Shown piece by piece: positions 12,703-21,963 of a DNA stretch of 64,000 nucleotides. The translations under genes and the position numbers were made by a program. Source of the DNA: Polymyxa betae A26-41 (taxonomy: Eukaryota; Protista; Endomyxa: Phytomyxea); NCBI GenBank assembly GCA_003693705.1, contig RBZT01000672.1, positions 178,838 through 242,837 on the forward strand, given 5' to 3'. Below the pieces are notes generated by a model. That model did no database searches. It saw nothing but the letters and a program-made list of their open reading frames with translations, and was not told where the DNA came from. Within the stretch, counting starts at the first letter, position 1. Each line of letters starts with the position of its first letter.

Positions 12703-13194
12703 TTACACGCGGCGACTCGGGGATCCACCAAGTACACGAACAGCTTTGCCATACCGATTATAGTATTTGAAATCTTGTGGAGCAATTCCCATTACTGATG
12801 AAGCCTTGATTGTACGAGGAGACAATGGCGAACGTAGATTTCCTGTTCCAACCTGCAGATTCTTATATAGAATAAAATTTCGACAACATCAATTTACCTC
12901 TAGTTGATTTGTGTCCAATTGAGCAGTACGGCTGCTTTCAAGTATGCTTTCACATCTTGCATTACACCACATCTCTCGAAGCTGGACGTATTCATCATAC
13001 GATGGCATATCTTCTCTGAAACGTAGCCGAGCGATCTTTGACGAACAAACTAATCCGAGATAATCGCTGTAGAGCTCGATGTCTGCATACGCAAGCCCGA
13101 GATATGACGTTAGCTTGATCCATCTCAAAGCTTCGGCTGCAGATACAGGGACCTGCCTGGTGCTGTCTCTGTTAATCTTGGCGATAGGCATCAT
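12703..13194 (-). CDS. Hypothetical protein (5' end uncertain)
   Basis: ORF 12889-13206 plus a GT-AG intron leads to a last exon VGTGNLRSPLSP...GGSPSRRV* (stop at 12703). No family recognised. Confidence 0.35.
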
Positions 13195-13773
13195 CAATGA
13201 TCGCAATTTGAGTCAATTCGCAATGAAGGAATTCCTGGTGGCCCTGACAACTGCCAACTACCGACTCTGTAACAGAGAGAAGGCTGCTGCATCTATCATA
13301 GCCAGCCCCTATGAATATCCTTCTTTACGTATAATTCACTTATCTACGGGGGGGCATGTACTACTCAGCTACATCGTTTTCATTATCAACTGATGAAGCG
13401 ATGGGGGAAATGATGAACAGCTCCAAATTGATAATAGCAATCAAGGCAATGCCTGGGTACTACCGGCCTTGCGCTTAGGATACAGAGCCGCCCGTTGACG
13501 AAGATCAACGAACAAGACGAGTCCAATCCAATTTAAATGATGAAGCGGTCATGGACTAAAGCAGCCACCGCAGTGTCATTCATTATTGCACTTTCTCTAT
13601 GTTCAGACTGTAGATTGACATCTAATCTGTTGATTGTTTGGTCCAGAAACTTGCCTGGATATGAAACATTCGATCAAGATTCGGTACCAATATCCCTACA
13701 GCTTTCTAAGTTGCTTAACGAGGGATCTGTTAGAAGGGACCTAGACTTCGTCTGCCCCTTTAACAACAGTGAA

Positions 13774-14675
13774 ATGGAACTTGAATTCTTACCCTGTCAT
13801 AAATCGTTCAAAAGCAATCCTCTTCTAGTTCATCCTGCGGTTGGTCGGGCACGACGACCGACATCCAAACTGCCTCCAGAAACTTTCGTTTATGGAAGTA
13901 AATCCGATTTCAAGGACAATTTGGATGCTGGAGAGAGTCGTGTATCTTATTTAAATTTAGCTCCACAACTCATTTTACTTTAGTAATATTTCACTGGAAG
14001 CAGCATGTTGCGAATCCTTTGGCTAAACCGGGGCTTGACTTTGTTCGCCTGAACATTTCCTCAGTCGATGAAGGAGCGCTGACATCGCAGCAAGTCAGCT
14101 GGGTCATTCTCGTATGAACAGGTTGGAATTTACAACTTAACAGGTGGCACAATATCGTAAATCACATGAAATCCGATTACGACAAGGATTACGACAGGCG
14201 ATATCTAGAGATATGCCAGCTCATTTTAAAGATATCACATTCGGTAGCTCCATAGCGTTCTTTAATCATGCAGTCTTGTGAGAGTGCCTTTAGGGAAAGA
14301 AGCGAAACCAGCGGAACGTGAGGACTTCAGAAGCATCATCACCAATCAGGCACATGCAGCTTGGATCCAAGGGCAACGCAAACGAGCCCAAGAACGGAAC
14401 AAACTGATTCGAGTATAACGGATATCAACACTGTGTAAATGCTGAGAGATACTTTGCAGAACCGATTGACAGGAACCGGTGTAGCACCACGATCCACTCG
14501 GGCAGATGAACTTCGGTTGGCACAGAGGCAGTCGAAGGAGGCGTTAATGAAGCATAAATCTGAATCGTCGTTGTGGAAGATGGAGCGATTTCGTCATATT
14601 CAACCGCGATTGCCCGTTGCTTGTTCGCAATCGCCACACTGCTCAGCGGTTTTCAATGCAACGAAGGAATCCTAA
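13774..14675 (+). CDS. CFAP77: CFAP77-like ciliary microtubule inner protein (DUF4483)
   Basis: NPLLVHPAVGRARRPTSKLPPETFVYG, W..H...PGLDFVRLN..SV..GA.T..QV..YR..HEIR and the C-terminal LWKMERFRHI match recalled CFAP77 motifs. Confidence 0.75.
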
Positions 14676-14705
14676 ACACCTGTATAAATTAAGTGTATTA
14701 CTCTT

Positions 14706-17700
14706 TTACAATGCCTTCAGCTTCGTGAAATATTGCTTGTTGAGAACAAAAGCTGCTCTATGTCGGATAGCTCGCTGCAGTTGGCTGTTCTTGTAGGCGT
14801 ATCCAATCAGTAATGCAATCCCAATGAGCATGGCAGTCATGGCGATTACAAATGTCTCAACTGCTGTTTGGAGTGGAGGATTTGTGACGAATACGAGAAA
14901 TTCAGTTGACAGTTCGCAATAGGATCCTTGTCTGATTGAACGAAATATTTGACATTTCATTGGATCACATACCTTGAAGAACAACAATACGGAAATGATA
15001 AAGTCCTTCACCACTCCACCGAATCCCAGCATTTTGCGATTGATCTATAATGTAAGGGCTGGTATTAATTAAACATGTAGTCGAGACTGAAGCGACAGTG
15101 GTTAGATGAAAGTCAAGGGTATTGATCAACAACCGACCTGAAGTGCAGAAGTCGTCGCGCCCATTTAGTTCTATGATTTTAAACGGCTCGGTGCAAGTAG
15201 CGATAGCTTCGTCTCCATCTAATATCAGAACTGGTACTTTAAACAAATCGCCATAAGCTGCTTCCGGCACCTGTTGGAACGTGATCAGCGCAAGGTGATT
15301 TTCGAAGGCTCTCAGAAGTACTTCTTGGATGCAATCTGTCTGTGTGATAGGAGTCATAGAGCCTCCAGATGTGGTACAAATACAGGAGTCTGTTCCCAAT
15401 CCAGTGCAGTTCTTATACTTCCCAGTTATCTGAGATATCCTCATAAACTCTGTCCGAGTTTTGTTTGGGTCGGCATTGTATATATTCGGGCTAATAGGAA
15501 CCCCAAGGCCTAATCGGTATGATTCGGTGCTTGGTTACATCACGTCAACCGCTGTACCTAAAGCTGATGGAGAACGGTAGTTTATAGGTAAAGTCAGCAT
15601 ATTCGTGTTTATTTGCGCCATGTCGAGGATTATTGCTTTACCAGGAGGACAACCCATTATGAAATGAGAAAATGTTGGCAATGACGCTGGATTGCATTGC
15701 ATCGAGCTGGATTTAGTTCCAAAAATGGCTGTTGCGATACAATTGTTGCAGGTTCCAACATCAGTGAACGTGAGAGAGACCTTCACACCTGAAGTGATAT
15801 CAGATGTGCAGCAAACGAAAGCCAATAAGCGGACCATTGACACCCAAATCATCGTCGAATGAGGCAGTTTGCAATTGGACCATCGCGTTAGAACTTTGGA
15901 TTCCTAGACAGTAATTTAGCTTTGAGTTTCAAGTGCATGCAAAGGACGCTGACCGAATAAAGACAACTGCGGCTTGGATTTGTATTCAGGCAGGAAAATG
16001 GAAACATTTGCAGACTCATCCAGGTCTAAGTGCTGATACGATGATGGTTTCACAACCGCTCTGTCATCATATGGACATGCTGGTATGTTAAGTGCGAACG
16101 AACGCTAAAAAACCGATTAGTTTTACAGCATCGGGGCACTTTGGGAATACCTTGGCGATCCTAGAAATATCAGGCATAAATGATAAATCAGCATCGACAT
16201 CAGTCGCAATCATGCTCCACTCTCCAGCTTGATACGTCCGGTTGCCTTGCAATTGGGGAGAATTCGCACCGAGCGCACACTCGACGGTCTGGGTGGAGAT
16301 GAAGCTGGTAATAACGCCCCATATCGCATCTAGCACGACTATTTGTCCAACAAATTGCTTTTTAAATGAAAACCTAGGATACTTAAAAAAACTCCTGACG
16401 TTTAACAAAGCACCCACGTTCCAGAGCTGAGACTTAATCGGAAATATGATGGATAAGAGGTTGTCATTAATTGAAGGCTTTGTTGACCAACAACAGCTTC
16501 GTTGCGATATGGTCGAGAATCCCATATTTTCCAATCACCTGCAGCTGACGACAGACGTGATGCAGCAGATGCAGGAATTATGACAGCTGCGCCGATTTGT
16601 GTTGCGTTTATATATCTCTTTCGTAATTCAGCAACACATTTGTTCACTTGGTAGGAAGATTACGTTGATTAAGAACACTGCGTCTTTGATCCAAACTGTG
16701 CAAAACAGATGTGCTTGCAACCATCCTTCACTGGTTCCATTGACAATTTGGTTAAATGTGCCTGCAACATGCAATACGACGGCTGAAGAATTGATTACAG
16801 TCACCGATAAGTCGAAATTCGTGATCCCGAAAAGCGAATGCGATCTAAATTGTTTTTGTTGGTAATATCGATAAGAATATAAAATGAAAAAATTACAAGG
16901 AAGAATGTCCTAGCGGTGATGAAGACGAATCAATCCCTGACAGCTGCAAATAACCCATATCGATATCATATGCCCATTCCTGTGTCTGTTAGCAATAAAT
17001 GACACAGGGGGTTCTGTTCGTACTTGCAGCGACGTGTTCCACCTATCGACAAGCAAGTAGCGAGGATCAGAAGCAAATCCAGAATAACTGGGAATGGGAA
17101 CTAGAATCAGGTGCCTTTTGAGTCTGGAGTCACAATTTTTGCAGCATATTCGTACCTAAAAATGTATTTACAGCGGATGGCAGAAATTTGACTGATGTGA
17201 ACCGTCGTAGCCAAGAAGCACCGATATACGAACTTCTTGGAATGAATATATGTAGTCGCTTAGCTTTCGAATTAATGTACGTTAAATGAAGCAGATCCGA
17301 CTGAAGACGATCAGATACGTATAATGTAAGCAAACGTGAAAATACACTGTCAAACCATAGATACATATTGCTTGATGATTGGGAATTTCCTATATAGCAA
17401 GGAATGACGAAATCCAAAGAAGTTCTTCCACAATAAGCAATGTCATTGGTTAGATCGTTGATAGCGAATGCTGTTGAAGTTGAGCTGGACGTGATTTGTA
17501 TCGATTTCGGCTTAGGTCCGGGGAACGATATGGTTGTGAAATATTGTCCATCGTCACGAGCAATCCAGAGAGTATCATCTGCAAAAATCTATCAATGGAG
17601 ACGGAGATCAACTAAAATATTACCGATAAAGACAAACAGGCCATGCCCATAAGCAAATGGTGTGATTACTGGCACTGATGAATTTTTGCGATGGCCCTCG

Positions 17701-19403
17701 AAGATAAACCCAGTTTGGGAGATTGAGGTATATGAGTTCGTTATCAAGCTCTTGAAATTGCCTCCAGCTCTAATAAGGCTAAATGTAATGTTACGATTGG
17801 GTAAAGATATAGGAGTTGCAAGAATGCTGTTGCTCAAGTTCATCAATCGGCATGATTTTGCTTGGCAGGAATATGTCTGAAACGGATCGTTGACGGTTCC
17901 ATTCCAGGCAGAGAGAAATATGAACGACCTGAAAGCATTGCTAAATTGTTCGGCATCGGGACATCAGCCCGCTTACGTTCGCTTTACCATGTCGGGGATT
18001 GGGCACTGAGATATGCTACCAATAACAGCATGGGTTGCTGTATAATTCAGAACTCGACTAATTGTGTTCGGAGAAGTAAGCGACAGCACGAACAACGATT
18101 CATTAGTAGCAACGACGAGCTCCTCTAGAGCGAATCGTGCATCCAAAATTGTGCCCGGGATAAGAACACTTTTTCATCGTGAGCAAACGAAGCGATAGTA
18201 TAGCGGTCTGACAAAACCTAAAATCTTTTGAGGTAACAAATCTATCTCTCGTAGCAATTATATGTGATGGACTGAATTCAACACACGCCAATCTAGAGCA
18301 CGGATGGCAGGTTATCTGACTGCGAGTCGGCAATGGCGCTCCAGTACGTAGAACTTCGTCTGAAGTCACGTTCGTTTGCACCGGCCATCTGTCAACATTT
18401 GAATGTTCCGAGAGAGCGATTATCATAGAAGATTACAGGGGTTCCAATAGCGGGAATAGCGAAATCGTGATCCGAGTTTCTTGAACAGGATCGCCCAGTA
18501 ATGAGGACTTTGTGACAGTGACAGTGATTGCGTTGATGGAAGCCTTCCCAGAGATTGTCGCTGTCCAGGCCTTTAAAGTTTCATTGTATTGAACATTATC
18601 GATGTTGAGCGTGGAGTCAGATAATGATATGTTTGGGGTTTCACCTGAAATTCACTTCAGTGAAGTTTTCCCTGAAAATCCATTTTGAAACACCATAATC
18701 TGCAAGCTGGTTGGTCAAAAATTTTGCTTCTTCCAGGGAATTGATTTCAGGATCCCAAACGCGAATGGGTAGAATCGCAAGGAATCTGGTTGAAGTGCTT
18801 GGATACGTAATCGAAATTATCTCTCCATGGTGTGTTAGTGTCTTCTCACTGCTTCGATATAAATATGACTACAAACTTATCATTATCTTCAGTACATAAT
18901 GGAAATACGTAAGACCTGGAGTTTCTTCTCTACGAAAAAGGCTTTAGTCTTGAAGGGCGACGCCCTGCCGGATGCAGTTAGCGTCTGCTCTCCGAAAGCA
19001 GCATTAGTTGCTGTAATTTTAATACGTTTTAGACCAGTCGAGTGCAATGAAAAGTAATGCATGGTCTGAGTCGAATTGTGAACCTATCCAGCTTGTTATA
19101 AGGATCACCATGCAGCAGCATTGCACATTACTGCGAGGAAAGGTGGCCCATCATCATCAAACGATTCGATTGTGAAATACAACGGCAAGTCATCGTCGTC
19201 ATACGATAGTCTCAGATCCAGAGCAATCTACCCGAGTTCAGTGCTCTGTTGTTAGATTCGAAATGAGAAGTGACCGTAGAGTCTGTTGTTATCCTGTCTG
19301 TATATCGTGGATACACACTAGCAGCTATATGGGGCTCCGCTCCACACCATCCTATATACACTATTGCAATGATAGCTAGAGATTCACATACGCGTCTCTT
19401 CAT
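14706..19403 (-). CDS. CATSPERB: CatSper channel auxiliary subunit beta-like protein: signal peptide, large extracellular domain and C-terminal TM
   Basis: Spliced sequence LPINYRSPSALGLGVPISPNIYNADPNK..ISQITGKYKNC..CIC..TDCIQEV..IIELNGR..WSGEGLYHFRIVVLQGSYCELSTEFLVFVTNPPL, followed by a TM. It aligns colinearly with the recalled human CATSPERB C-terminus (LPINYRPPSNMGIAIPLTDNFYHADPSK..SKKTGKFKQC..CNC..SDCREKV..VTEVNMR..IKGSELFHFRVTVISGVTFCNLIEEFQIYVDEAPL + TM). N-terminal signal-like MKRRVCESLAIIAIVYIGWCGA. Confidence 0.8.
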
Positions 19404-19860
19404 TCTAAAGCAAAACCATCTGTCAAGGCCATGACGGTTCCGAGACCCGTAACAACTAGTCATAGTGATGCTATCTTCAATGTTGCAAGCTCCAAAATGT
19501 CCCATGCTCGGATCCTAACTCTGGCGTTCAAATGTCATAGCCAAAATTCCGATTTGGCTTCCAGCTGGATCAGAAAGAATTCTGCAAAGTCATCCGAAAC
19601 CAAGAGCATACGATATCATAACATATGATGTCAATTGAACAGTTTTTATACGTCCATTCAGTATAACAGACTGGCTTATCTGCAGCAGGGAAATTATCTT
19701 TGACCTACATTTCCACGTTGTGGGCTGCGCACCCTGCGCTTTGCTGTACTGAAGTGCGCTACGGACCGGGCGCGCACCTCACCAACTCTTCTCCCTCTTT
19801 CTGGAGACCGATTTCTACCATCGCATTGGCAGTGTCCTTCTATCTAGACCTTAATCTATA

Positions 19861-21963
19861 ATGAAGGTGAGTGCATCGATGTCCTGTTTGCGATTGCTGT
19901 TGATGCTGACTGCAACAGCATATGATGCGAGGCCAGCCGTCCCTGTTCAAAGCAGGGACCAAGCATTTATCTGGCGTCACCGATGCTGTCATGCGAAACA
20001 TTGAAGCATGCCGGGCATTGGCCAAGATGACCCAGACCTCTCTGGGTCCGAACGGAATGAACAAGATGGTGATTAACCATCTTGATAAATTGTTTGTTAC
20101 TTCGGATTCGGCGACGATCCTGAAAGAAACTGACATCGAGCACCCGGCTGCAAAAATGATGGTCATGGCTGCTAATCAGCAAGATTACGAATGCGGCGAC
20201 GCCAGCAATTTTGTTATTGTACTTTGCGGTGATTTGATGACCAAAGCCGAGGGTCTTCTACGAATGGGCCTTCACCCAGCAGATATCGTTCGAGGATACA
20301 CCAATGCTGGTGCTAAGGCATGTGAGATTATGCAGTCTCAAGGCTGCCATACACAAGGTTCAGATACATCGACGCCTTTATCTTAGTTGTTTTTATTCAC
20401 TCTGTGTTTCAGCGTCGTACACTGATGCCAAAGATTTGGCTGCCGCTTGCTATGCCGCTATTTGCGCTAAGCAATACGGAAATGAAGAAGCGATTTGCAA
20501 CTTGATTGCGACAGCCTCTGCTGCTGTTATGCCTGCAAAGCCGTCCAGTTTTAATGGTATTTTTTTCACTGTTGATAAGTTTATTCTCATCTTCTTGCAG
20601 TCGACAACGTTCGAGTTTGCAAAATCCATGGTGGCAGTTTGCAGCAAAGCGAAGTGGTAATGGGCGTCGTTGTCGCTCGTGCTCCGGACGGCACCGTTCA
20701 AGATGTCGAGAAAGCGAATGTCGCTGTGTTTGTTGAATCTATCGATGTCGCCAACACGGACACCAAAGGTTTCGATTTTACACATTCTCATGCTTAAGCT
20801 CAATGTTTACAGGAACTGTGGCTTTGAAATCCGCCGAAGAGCTACTGAACTACAGCCTCGGTGAGGAGAATCTCATTAAGAAGATGATCGAGAACTTAGT
20901 TTCGATTGGATGCAATGTTGTCGTGACCGGAGGCAAAATTTCCGAAATGGCTTTGCACTATTTAAACAAGCATAACATCCTCGCTGTGTAAGCTCAACTT
21001 CACAGCCTCTGAATATCCACCGCTTATGCCTGTTTTTAGTCGAGTACTTTCGAAGTTCGAGCTGCGACGACTGGCTCGGTCATTAAAAGCGAATTTGAGC
21101 TTAAGCATCAACACTCCGATCACCAAGGACGATCTCGGTTATTGCTCTCGTGCTTATCGCAGGTCCGATTATTTTCTGTAATGATCTTTCTATTGTTTCT
21201 CATTCGATTATAGAGACATCGGTGCTCAGAGCTGCACCTTATTCGAACAGATTTCCGCAGATGGTGATGCCGTTTGTCAACGAAGCGCTATTAGCACCAT
21301 CATTCTGCGCGCCTCAACAGAAAACACCTTAAACGATTACGAACGTGCCATCGAAGATGGTGTCAACGTTGTTCGTGCGGTATGATATTTGTTTGCGATA
21401 TAATCGTGGTTTCATCTTATGTAAAAGGCATGCAAATCGCCCGAGTTTACTGCCGGCGGTGGTGCTTGTGAAATTGCTGTCGCTTCGCAACTGCTGTCGT
21501 ACGCCACTAGCTGTGAAGGTCTCGAGCAGTATGCCATCAAAGCGTTCGCTGAAAGTCTGGAAATCTTCCCACGAACGCTTGCCCAGAACGCTGGTCTAGA
21601 TGCCACCAAGATTCTTGCCAAGGTAAATCATGCTTTCTCTCTCGTCACTTTTTGTCTTAGCGTAATGCTGCAGCTGTATTCGGCCCATGAACGAGGTGAC
21701 AGTTCCGTTGGTGTTGATATTGAAGGTGGTGATATCGCCGATATGAAGGCTCGTGGCGTATTGGGTATGTTTGCTGAGCTGCCAAAGAGCGTTGCCAATA
21801 AGATTATTTGTTAGACCATCTGGAGACGAAATTGAACGCTCTGAAGCTCACCACTCATGTTGCGACAACGATTCTATCGGTGGATCAGATTATCATGGCG
21901 AAGCCAGCTGGTGGACCCAAGATGCCAAAAGGACAAGGACACTGGGATGACCAGGAAGATTAA
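19861..21963 (+). CDS. CCT8: T-complex protein 1 subunit theta (CCT chaperonin)
   Basis: RNIEAC..LAKMTQTSLGPNGMNKMVINHLDKLFVTSDSATIL.E..IEHPAAK, SKFELRRL and VDQIIMAKPAGGPK. The first exon ATGAAG is followed by a gtgagt intron. Confidence 0.95.

What the first reader, a model, noticed from the sequence alone, without database searches (positions are those of the whole stretch)
14706..19403. CatSper-beta-like subunit of the sperm Ca2+ channel complex in a zoosporic protist
Seen: removing the 48-nt intron 15510-15557 and the intron near 14920-14968 gives LPINYRSPSALGLGVPISPNIYNADPNKTRTEFMRISQITGKYKNC...CIC...TDCIQEV...GEGLYHFRIVVLQGSYCELSTEFLVFVTNPPL followed by one TM. The gene also has an N-terminal signal peptide, ~4.7 kb of multi-exon extracellular domain and an upstream GCPPGK motif. 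Knowledge (recalled): this colinear motif series, cysteine spacing and topology match CATSPERB, an auxiliary subunit of the flagellar CatSper channel. CatSper is best known from animal sperm and has been reported only patchily in a few unicellular lineages. Inference: this organism, probably a plant-parasitic phytomyxean, may encode a full CatSper complex that controls zoospore swimming and chemotaxis to roots. That would be an apparently uncharacterised system in this group and a potential control target absent from angiosperm hosts. The ORF track fragments the gene, so automated annotation would likely call it hypothetical.
Basis: partly seen in the sequence, partly recalled or inferred. Interest (0 to 1): 0.9.

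Follow-up and report, generated by a model that had tools for sequence, protein, structure and literature searches.

The report
CatSper-beta gene in a plasmodiophorid protist
This is a real, transcribed gene for the beta auxiliary subunit of the CatSper flagellar calcium channel. It lies in a root-infecting protist, very probably Polymyxa betae, whose genome also encodes four CatSper-like pore subunits, so its zoospores may steer with the same kind of channel as animal sperm.

Summary

**Gene.** A minus-strand gene runs from the ATG at 19403 to the stop at 14708-14706. My model has 22 exons and a 1230-aa product with a signal peptide, a large ectodomain, one C-terminal TM helix and a short tail.

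**Family.** True exons hit Pfam CATSPERB_C, and exon 19 alone scores 35.5 bits against a cut-off of 27. The closest relative is a Spongospora subterranea protein whose only PDB sequence matches are mouse CATSPERB chains. Its model aligns to CATSPERB over 544 residues (Z 19).

**Transcription.** Spliced RNA-derived contigs from two studies cover the gene.

**Organism.** The assembly size and contig count match the Polymyxa betae draft genome.

**Other subunits.** Four single-domain channel genes have best single-domain PDB hits to CatSper1, 2, 3 and 4 respectively. A CATSPER delta/epsilon-like gene is also present. No gamma subunit was detected.

**Novelty.** This is a new member of a known kind. 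CatSper complexes in unicellular eukaryotes have been reported since 2014, and UniRef already labels the Spongospora homologue. No paper I could search links CatSper to plasmodiophorids.

**Open points.**
- Two predicted introns are retained in both RNA contigs, which would truncate the protein.
- The CatSper3-like filter carries Asn where mouse has Asp.
- Function in zoospores is inferred, not shown.

The parts
14706..19403 (-). Whole coding region of the CATSPERB-like gene, from ATG to stop. The model has 22 exons, 21 introns of 44-55 nt (mean 48) and a 1230-aa product.
   Evidence: RNA contigs with GT..AG joints. The ORF stays open across all junctions.
19338..19403 (-). Signal-peptide-like N-terminus, MKRRVCESLAIIAIVYIGWCGA.
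   Evidence: Read directly from the sequence. No dedicated predictor was run.
15835..19337 (-). Exons 1-17, about 935 aa of N-terminal ectodomain. No Pfam model is detected here, but the exons are weakly colinear with full-length CATSPERB homologues.
   Evidence: Local profile of 27 full-length homologues against single exons. Exons 3, 5, 6, 7, 9, 13, 14, 15 and 16 hit profile positions 71 to 922 in order. Shuffle control. tblastn of Spongospora P0068 covers 17834 to 14715.
14709..15788 (-). Exons 18-22, holding the CATSPERB_C domain. It carries the motifs GCPPGK, LPINYRSPS, TGKYKNC, CIC, DCIQE, ELNGRDDFC, GEGLYHFR and SYCEL, then the TM helix and tail.
   Evidence: Pfam PF15149: exon 19 scores 35.5 bits (profile 50-111) and exon 22 scores 26.2 bits (profile 207-252). 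The ORF pieces are colinear. Residues invariant across the family are present.
14793..14867 (-). Single C-terminal transmembrane helix, TAVETFVIAMTAMLIGIALLIGYAY (aa 1178-1202), followed by a 28-aa tail.
   Evidence: Kyte-Doolittle window and coordinates. The region aligns with the TM of mouse CATSPERB in the orthologue alignment.
16618..16663 (-). Predicted 46-nt GT..AG intron, kept in both RNA contigs. If kept, the ORF stops at 16630-16628 after 732 aa.
   Evidence: A frame change is needed here. tblastn of Spongospora P0068 brackets the position. Both contigs run unbroken across it. Truncation computed.
16374..16417 (-). Predicted 44-nt GT..AG intron, also kept in both RNA contigs. Spongospora isoforms diverge at the orthologous junction.
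16651..16708 (+). 58-nt stretch skipped only in the X2 contig. Its ends read GT..AG on the plus strand, not on the gene's strand.
   Evidence: Record arithmetic and depth bins; end letters. Unexplained; it may be an antisense transcript or an assembly chimera.
15087..15137 (-).
   Evidence: Joint present in both RNA contigs.
15271..15321 (-).
   Evidence: Joint present in both RNA contigs.

Best explanation
**What it is.** The gene encodes the plasmodiophorid orthologue of CATSPER-beta. It is a type-I membrane glycoprotein of about 1230 aa: a signal peptide, a multi-domain ectodomain, a cysteine-rich CATSPERB_C stem, one TM helix and a short tail.

**How it probably works (inferred).** By homology with the mouse CatSpermasome, the ectodomain would form part of an extracellular canopy with the delta/epsilon-like subunit. 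The TM helix would sit against the voltage-sensor domain of the CatSper4-like pore subunit. Together they would scaffold a heterotetrameric Ca2+ channel built from the four CatSper-like pore proteins this genome encodes. In an organism whose only flagellated stage is the zoospore, the most likely site of action is the zoospore flagellar membrane, gating Ca2+ entry that changes flagellar beating and swimming direction.

**Shown here:** family membership, gene structure, transcription and splicing, and co-occurrence with pore and delta/epsilon-like genes.

**Inferred only:** complex formation, flagellar location and a role in motility or chemotaxis.
For: **Sequence family**
- Pfam CATSPERB_C scores above the cut-off on a true exon (35.5 bits against 27). 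The hits on exons 18/19/22 are colinear with the profile.
- There are 66 HMMER relatives. Of the 20 looked up, those with a family-specific source name are all CATSPERB or CATSPERB-domain proteins from Spongospora, zoosporic fungi and hemichordates.
- Family-invariant cysteines and motifs are present.
- Single exons map in order along a profile of 27 full-length homologues, from position 71 to 1252. Exons 3, 5, 6, 7, 9, 13-16 and 18-22 matched or beat at least 194 of 200 shuffles; exons 5, 7, 9, 14, 15 and 18-22 beat all 200.

**Nearest orthologue, Spongospora P0068**
- CATSPERB_C scores 102.9 bits.
- Its only PDB sequence hits are CATSPERB chains 7eeb_E and 9ubw_E, including the TM.
- Its AF2 model (pLDDT 72.8) gives Foldseek E 6.8e-34 and 1e-32 to CATSPERB, ahead of epsilon, delta and gamma.
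- VIA-align gives Z 19.0 over 544 residues, model 1-762 against chain 345-1058.

**Gene model and transcription**
- The ORF is an open 1230 aa with a signal peptide and one TM.
- Spliced contigs from two studies cover it.

**Partner genes in the same genome**
- CatSper2-like: TLDNW filter, top hit 7eeb_B at 1.5e-23.
- CatSper4-like: SQDGW filter, best single-domain hit 7eeb_D at 128 bits.
- CatSper1-like: TLDDW filter, top hit 9ubw_A.
- CatSper3-like: top hit 9ubw_C.
- CATSPERD/E_C gene: 57.9 bits, PDB hits to delta and epsilon.

**Known role of beta.** In mouse it is a canopy hub that anchors to CATSPER4 through its single TM (PMC13484710).
Against: - Both RNA contigs retain two predicted introns. 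Retention would end the protein at 732 aa, before the CATSPERB_C domain and the TM. No fully spliced transcript was seen in this organism.
- The animal-built Pfam models for the CATSPERB N-terminal domains do not hit the exons.
- No gamma subunit and no CatSper-tau was found.
- The fold of the window's own 189-aa piece was mediocre (pLDDT 64.7). Its CatSper-chain matches ranked top but were not significant, at E 0.06-0.1.
- The two RNA raw-read runs carrying the same organism code as X1 gave no reads, which is no test.
- Nothing here shows stage of expression, location or binding.
Confidence: 0.8

Rival explanations
1. The protein is a CATSPERB-family ectodomain protein that has been repurposed. 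It would act alone, for example as an adhesion or sensing molecule, and not as part of a CatSper channel.
For: - No gamma subunit was found.
- The N-terminal half is highly diverged, with no Pfam hit.
- The retained-intron form would give a secreted 732-aa ectodomain without a TM.
Against: - The genome keeps one gene each with a best hit to CatSper1, 2, 3 and 4, plus a delta/epsilon-like gene.
- The stem and TM region, which contacts CATSPER4 in mouse, is the best-conserved part.
Confidence: 0.1
2. The gene is decaying or effectively silenced. The dominant transcripts keep two introns and cannot encode the membrane-anchored protein.
For: Both RNA contigs, from two studies, are unbroken over 16151-16649, so they include 16374-16417. 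X1 also keeps all of 16618-16663, and X2 keeps part of it. Retention gives a stop at 16630-16628.
Against: - With the two canonical GT..AG introns removed, the ORF stays open for 1230 aa across 22 exons with no other defect.
- Exons downstream of the retained introns score strongly against the family profile.
- Spongospora has a spliced form through the same junctions (P0068).
- Contigs drop rare variants, so a spliced form may still exist.
- The sampled material may not have been zoospores.
Confidence: 0.07
3. The stretch is contaminant DNA from a zoosporic fungus or an animal, mis-binned into the protist assembly.
For: - The published assembly was binned from a root metagenome.
- Many relatives of the protein are fungal.
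Against: - The gene lies within a contig that spans at least the 64-kb window, with even composition near 44-45% GC.
- All 21 introns are of the same tiny 44-55-nt class.
- The best hit by far is from another plasmodiophorid, Spongospora.
- RNA contigs from two studies match without a single difference.
Confidence: 0.02

Closest known systems
Mouse and human CATSPERB (PDB 7EEB chain E, 9UBW chain E)
   Same: - CATSPERB_C domain with the same cysteine and motif series.
- Type-I topology: signal peptide, ectodomain of about 1150 aa, one TM and a short tail.
- Similar length, 1230 aa against 1109 aa.
- The orthologue's model aligns to residues 345-1058 of the chain.
   Different: - About 15-16% identity in the structural alignments.
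- The Pfam models for the 1st, 2nd, head and Ig-like domains are not detected.
- Expressed in a protist with zoospores rather than in sperm.
- The partner set seems smaller: no gamma, zeta or tau was found.
Spongospora subterranea CRZ03233.1 / CRZ03226.1 (UniRef A0A0H5QPE5, A0A0H5QMJ9)
   Same: - Nearest relative: E 1e-21 to a single ORF piece, and tblastn colinear from 17834 to 14715.
- Same plasmodiophorid order.
- UniRef already names it a 'CATSPERB C-terminal domain-containing protein'.
   Different: - These are partial transcript-derived proteins of 365, 503 and 815 aa that lack the first ~400 aa.
- Identity is only about 30-44%.
- NCBI calls them hypothetical.
- No paper I could search discusses them.
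CATSPERB-like proteins of zoosporic fungi (Allomyces, Blastocladiella, Rozella, chytrids)
   Same: - Full-length proteins of 1280-1380 aa with CATSPERB_C at the C-terminus.
- The window's exons map onto them in order.
- They belong to organisms with flagellated zoospores or gametes.
- Allomyces CatSper genes are described in the literature (bioRxiv 10.1101/230292).
   Different: - They come from a different supergroup, Opisthokonta rather than Rhizaria.
- Identity is about 30-37% in the C-terminal domain only.
CATSPERD / CATSPERE (paralogous canopy subunits)
   Same: - Related stem and TM domain.
- Weak cross-hit of exon 22 to CATSPERD-E_C at 13.9 bits.
- They rank second in the fold search.
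   Different: - CATSPERB_C scores clearly higher.
- A separate gene on contig C853 carries the true delta/epsilon-type domain at 57.9 bits.

Membership tests
CATSPERB (CatSper auxiliary subunit beta) | CATSPERB_C domain (Pfam PF15149) above the curated cut-off. | tested here: met
   True exon 19 scores 35.5 bits against a cut-off of 27. Exon 22 scores 26.2 bits. The ORF piece scores 47.9 bits. The hits are colinear at profile positions 31-51, 46-127 and 203-252.
CATSPERB (CatSper auxiliary subunit beta) | Family-invariant motifs and cysteines of the stem domain: LPxNYRPPS, YKxC..CxC..SDC, ELNGRxD, ELYHFR and YCxL. | tested here: met
   In the 30-sequence alignment A1, the invariant columns include C43, C51, C53, D67, C68, N124, R126, D128, L178, H180 and F181 of the window piece.
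CATSPERB (CatSper auxiliary subunit beta) | Type-I topology: signal peptide, large ectodomain, single C-terminal TM helix and short cytoplasmic tail. | tested here: met
   The spliced ORF has a hydrophobic N-terminus and one TM at aa 1178-1202 of 1230. This rests on a hydropathy window only; no dedicated predictor was run.
CATSPERB (CatSper auxiliary subunit beta) | N-terminal domains of beta recognised by Pfam: CATSPERB_1st, 2nd, head and Ig-like. | tested here: not met
   Ten ORF pieces, ten true exons and an own-genome scan gave no hit to any CATSPERB N-terminal model. The same models also miss the Allomyces, Rozella and Spongospora homologues, so they appear to be animal-centred.
CATSPERB (CatSper auxiliary subunit beta) | Whole-length colinearity and shared fold with CATSPERB outside the C-terminal domain. 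| tested here: inconclusive
   **For:** exons 3 to 16 hit a profile of full-length homologues in order, and most beat shuffles. The Spongospora orthologue's model aligns to 7eeb_E residues 345-1058 at Z 19.0.

**Limits:** the per-exon scores are low (4-17 bits). The window's own first ~400 aa were not folded, because a joined model has no reference.
CatSper channel complex | Four distinct single-domain pore subunits (CatSper1-4) with a T/SxDxW filter. | tested here: met
   Best single-domain PDB hit for each locus:
- C1: CatSper1, filter TLDDW.
- C446: CatSper2, filter TLDNW.
- C892: CatSper3, but filter TCNNW.
- C666: CatSper4, filter SQDGW.

One of the four filters has Asn in place of Asp. 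No tree was built.
CatSper channel complex | [quoted passage not shown] | tested here: inconclusive
   A delta/epsilon-like gene is present on C853, with PF22850 at 57.9 bits and PDB hits to delta (1.5e-8) and epsilon (5e-7). Gamma was not found with PF15064 or PF22851. Exon-wise scans have low power, and the gamma C-terminal model was not tested.
CatSper channel complex | Physical association of beta with the pore (its TM against the CATSPER4 voltage sensor) and flagellar location. | not testable with these tools
   This needs biochemistry or imaging. The one complex prediction gave no verdict.

The most novel reading that the evidence does not exclude
Plasmodiophorids may hold CatSper-beta back by regulated intron retention. 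The two tiny introns at 16618-16663 and 16374-16417 would stay in the mRNA during intracellular stages, giving a truncated or non-productive message. They would be removed only when zoospores form. This switch would be shared with Spongospora, whose isoforms break at the orthologous junction. The channel it completes would have an unusual D-D-N-D selectivity ring.
Probability: 0.15. Interest if true: 0.7.

Novelty: new member of a known kind. Interest (0 to 1): 0.5.

Why it matters
CatSper is well studied in animal sperm, but PMC6660944 states that nothing is known about how it is regulated in non-metazoans. Polymyxa betae zoospores carry the rhizomania virus to sugar-beet roots, and its relatives cause powdery scab and clubroot. 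A near-complete CatSper gene set gives a concrete, testable candidate for how these zoospores turn Ca2+ signals into steering. It also adds a rhizarian lineage to the record of the complex's distribution across eukaryotes. [quoted passage not shown]

Tried and rejected
**Searches that found nothing**
- Own-genome Pfam scans for CATSPERG beta-propeller, CATSPERD beta-propeller, CATSPERG Ig-like, CTSRT / CatSper-tau and CATSPERB_2nd gave no match. These are six-frame, exon-wise scans, so absence is not shown.
- A guessed accession, PF22852, turned out to be SoxE_N and is irrelevant.
- The search for homologous proteins with the 815-aa Spongospora protein found only its own cluster. No Plasmodiophora brassicae orthologue was seen in any search. 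That genome could not be searched directly, so nothing follows from this.

**Weak or uninformative results**
- The weak CATSPERB_C-like hit on C127 (20.6 bits, three TGA inside) did not hold up against the full-length profile. I treat it as chance or a relic.
- Complex prediction with beta exon 22 and the CatSper4-like channel core gave no verdict. It is evidence neither way.
- The RNA raw-read runs X16 and X17 gave zero reads on the gene, which is no test.
- Folding the window's own 189-aa ORF piece, which contains two intron-coded inserts, gave a mediocre model with top-ranked but non-significant CatSper hits.

**Papers not held**
- Cai et al. 2014 (PMC4169769) and Cai et al. 2015 (PMC4355082) are not in the library. 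What they report is taken from papers that cite them.

**The joined spliced protein**
- It was never sent to any search, fold or complex tool. All tool queries were single exons or stop-free pieces, given by reference.
- The exons were joined only inside local scripts, to check frame continuity, length and hydropathy and to locate motifs.
Full report
**What is there**

Pfam matches three successive pieces to CATSPERB_C (PF15149) in profile order:
- positions 31-51 at 14.6 bits
- positions 46-127 at 47.9 bits (E 1.5e-12, cut-off 27)
- positions 203-252 at 26.6 bits

**Gene model**

I laid Logan contigs of two runs from two studies on window 14500-19700. A 3805-nt contig (X1, 2017) and a 5780-nt contig (X2, 2022) lie on the gene's strand without one differing letter. 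They skip short stretches whose ends all read GT..AG on the minus strand. Fifteen joints were listed.

Four more joints at the 5' end follow from three things:
- the record arithmetic, which requires 191 nt of skips
- the depth bins
- the requirement for an open frame

Its second intron is really 14927-14972. Two in-frame 51-nt introns without stops, 15087-15137 and 15271-15321, were missed.

Between 16151 and 16844 the frame changes twice, yet both contigs run unbroken over 16151-16649. tblastn with the nearest relative brackets two canonical introns, 16618-16663 and 16374-16417.

With all 21 introns removed (44-55 nt, mean 48), the ORF is open from the ATG at 19403 to the stop at 14708-14706. 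The product is 1230 aa, with a hydrophobic signal-like start, one TM helix at aa 1178-1202 and a 28-aa tail.

The exons were joined only inside local scripts for these frame, length and hydropathy checks. Everything there went exon by exon, by reference.

**Family**

With the intron-coded residues removed, exon 19 alone scores 35.5 bits and exon 22 scores 26.2 bits to CATSPERB_C.

A full HMMER scan of 1.84 billion representatives with the 189-aa piece gave 66 hits. I looked up 20 of them. Every one that carries a family-specific source name is a CATSPERB or CATSPERB-domain protein; the rest are 'hypothetical protein', one UniRef 'PKD domain-containing', or unnamed. They come from:
- Spongospora subterranea
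- zoosporic fungi: Paraphysoderma, Allomyces, Blastocladiella, Rozella, Podochytrium and Polyrhizophydium
- hemichordates

I built a local profile from 27 full-length homologues and searched it against each exon on its own. It hit 14 exons in strict order, from profile position 71 to 1252. Exons 3, 5, 6, 7, 9, 13-16 and 18-22 matched or beat at least 194 of 200 shuffles, and ten of them beat all 200. The likeness therefore runs the whole length, although the animal-built Pfam models for the N-terminal beta domains do not fire. Those models also miss the fungal and Spongospora homologues.

**Structure**

The window's own 189-aa piece folded only moderately (pLDDT 64.7). Its three best Foldseek matches were the CatSper beta, epsilon and delta chains, but at E 0.06-0.1.

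The 815-aa Spongospora orthologue aligns to the window from exon 8 to the stop. Its results were much clearer:
- Its only PDB sequence hits are CATSPERB chains 7eeb_E and 9ubw_E.
- Its model has pLDDT 72.8.
- Foldseek gives E 6.8e-34 and 1e-32 to CATSPERB, then epsilon, delta and gamma, then generic propellers.
- VIA-align gives Z 19.0 over 544 residues, model 1-762 against chain 345-1058. The next unrelated match scores 12.9 over about 150 residues.

**Organism**

The window's genome has 27,085,814 bases in 1001 contigs. The Polymyxa betae draft is described as 1,001 contigs, 27,085,946 bp and 45.1% GC (PMC6328671). The window sits at 42-51% GC, mostly 43-46%. The nearest protein comes from Spongospora, a fellow plasmodiophorid.

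**The rest of the complex**

A six-frame scan for Ion_trans found 22 loci. Most are K+, CNG-like or two-pore channels. Four are single-domain channels, and each one's best single-domain PDB hit is a different CatSper paralogue:

| Contig | Best single-domain PDB hit | Filter |
|---|---|---|
| C446 | CatSper2, E 1.5e-23, top hit overall | TLDNW |
| C666 | CatSper4, 128 bits | SQDGW |
| C1 | CatSper1 | TLDDW |
| C892 | CatSper3 | TCNNW, aligned to mouse TVDGW |

A gene on C853 carries CATSPERD-E_C at 57.9 bits, with PDB hits to delta and epsilon, a GCPP motif and a C-terminal TM. Gamma and CatSper-tau were not found. These exon-wise scans are weak tests.

**How it most likely works**

In mouse, beta contacts delta and gamma in the extracellular canopy. 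It anchors to CATSPER4 through its single TM and is needed for assembly of the whole channel (PMC13484710). The stem and TM are the best-conserved part here, and the candidate partners exist in the genome. I infer the same scaffold role in a zoospore flagellar Ca2+ channel. Binding, location and physiological role are not shown. The one complex prediction returned no verdict.

**Open problems**
- Both RNA contigs keep the two predicted introns. If they are kept, translation stops at 16630-16628 after 732 aa, before the CATSPERB_C domain and the TM. Contigs can drop rarer spliced forms, and the sampled stage is unknown.
- In Spongospora, three isoforms diverge at the junction orthologous to exon 14/15. 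This hints at shared alternative processing.
- The X2 contig also skips 16651-16708, whose ends are GT..AG on the opposite strand.

**What is known**

Papers citing Cai et al. 2014 state that CatSper1-4, beta and gamma date to early eukaryotes (PMC5362262) and that CatSper genes occur in all eukaryotic groups (PMC6660944). The species screened there include Thecamonas, Allomyces and Aurantiochytrium (PMC5362262). Allomyces expresses CATSPERB, G and D homologues (bioRxiv 10.1101/230292). UniRef labels the Spongospora proteins by their CATSPERB domain. No paper in the library holds CatSper together with Plasmodiophor*, and the four that hold CatSper and Rhizaria do not link them.

Earlier first-stage notes of this scan flagged a CatSper2 gene and a possible C2CD6 homologue elsewhere in this genome. 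My own searches agree with the first and did not confirm the second.

**Verdict**

This is a correct and careful reading of raw sequence. It identifies a new member of a known kind, in a lineage where it has not been discussed. Interest is moderate.

Noticed in passing
L011 (G000:C892:9876-10629, minus strand); pore exon L011:1017-1229: The CatSper3-like pore gene reads TCNNW where mouse CatSper3 reads TVDGW. The predicted selectivity ring would therefore be Asp, Asp, Asn, Asp instead of four Asp.
   Followed up: partly
window 16374-16417 and 16618-16663; Spongospora P0067, P0001 and P0068: Two tiny introns are retained in RNA contigs from two studies. In Spongospora, one isoform ends at aa 365 of P0068, and another joins P0068 at aa 366 behind a different 53-aa head. 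Both breaks fall at the orthologous exon 14/15 junction.
   Followed up: partly
window 16651-16708: The X2 contig skips 58 nt whose ends are GT..AG on the plus strand, opposite to the gene. This may be a spliced antisense transcript or an assembly chimera.
   Followed up: partly
window about 12900-14500: The 5780-nt X2 contig runs about 1.6 kb past the 3' end of the gene into the neighbouring region. Either transcripts of adjacent genes overlap or they were assembled together.
   Followed up: no
window 19922-20386 and onwards, plus strand: An ORF with a chaperonin-like (CCT/TCP-1-type) sequence, recognised by eye and not tested, starts about 520 bp upstream of the CatSper-beta ATG on the other strand. 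The two genes are arranged head to head.
   Followed up: no
L004/L005 (G000:C853:46643-47268, minus strand): A CATSPER delta/epsilon-like gene. It has a GCPP motif, an upstream exon with an FDGGVTF-type motif that may belong to a propeller, and a C-terminal TM.
   Followed up: partly
L003 (G000:C127:3648-3881, plus strand): A short stretch reads NTGKYRKN..C.C..SEC, like the CATSPERB stem motif, but it has three TGA stops inside and no supporting exons. It is either chance or a relic.
   Followed up: partly
window 15087-15137 and 15271-15321: Both are 51-nt introns, in frame and free of stops, so ORF scans read straight through them. Similar introns elsewhere in this genome could inflate naive ORF-based protein predictions.
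   Followed up: yes
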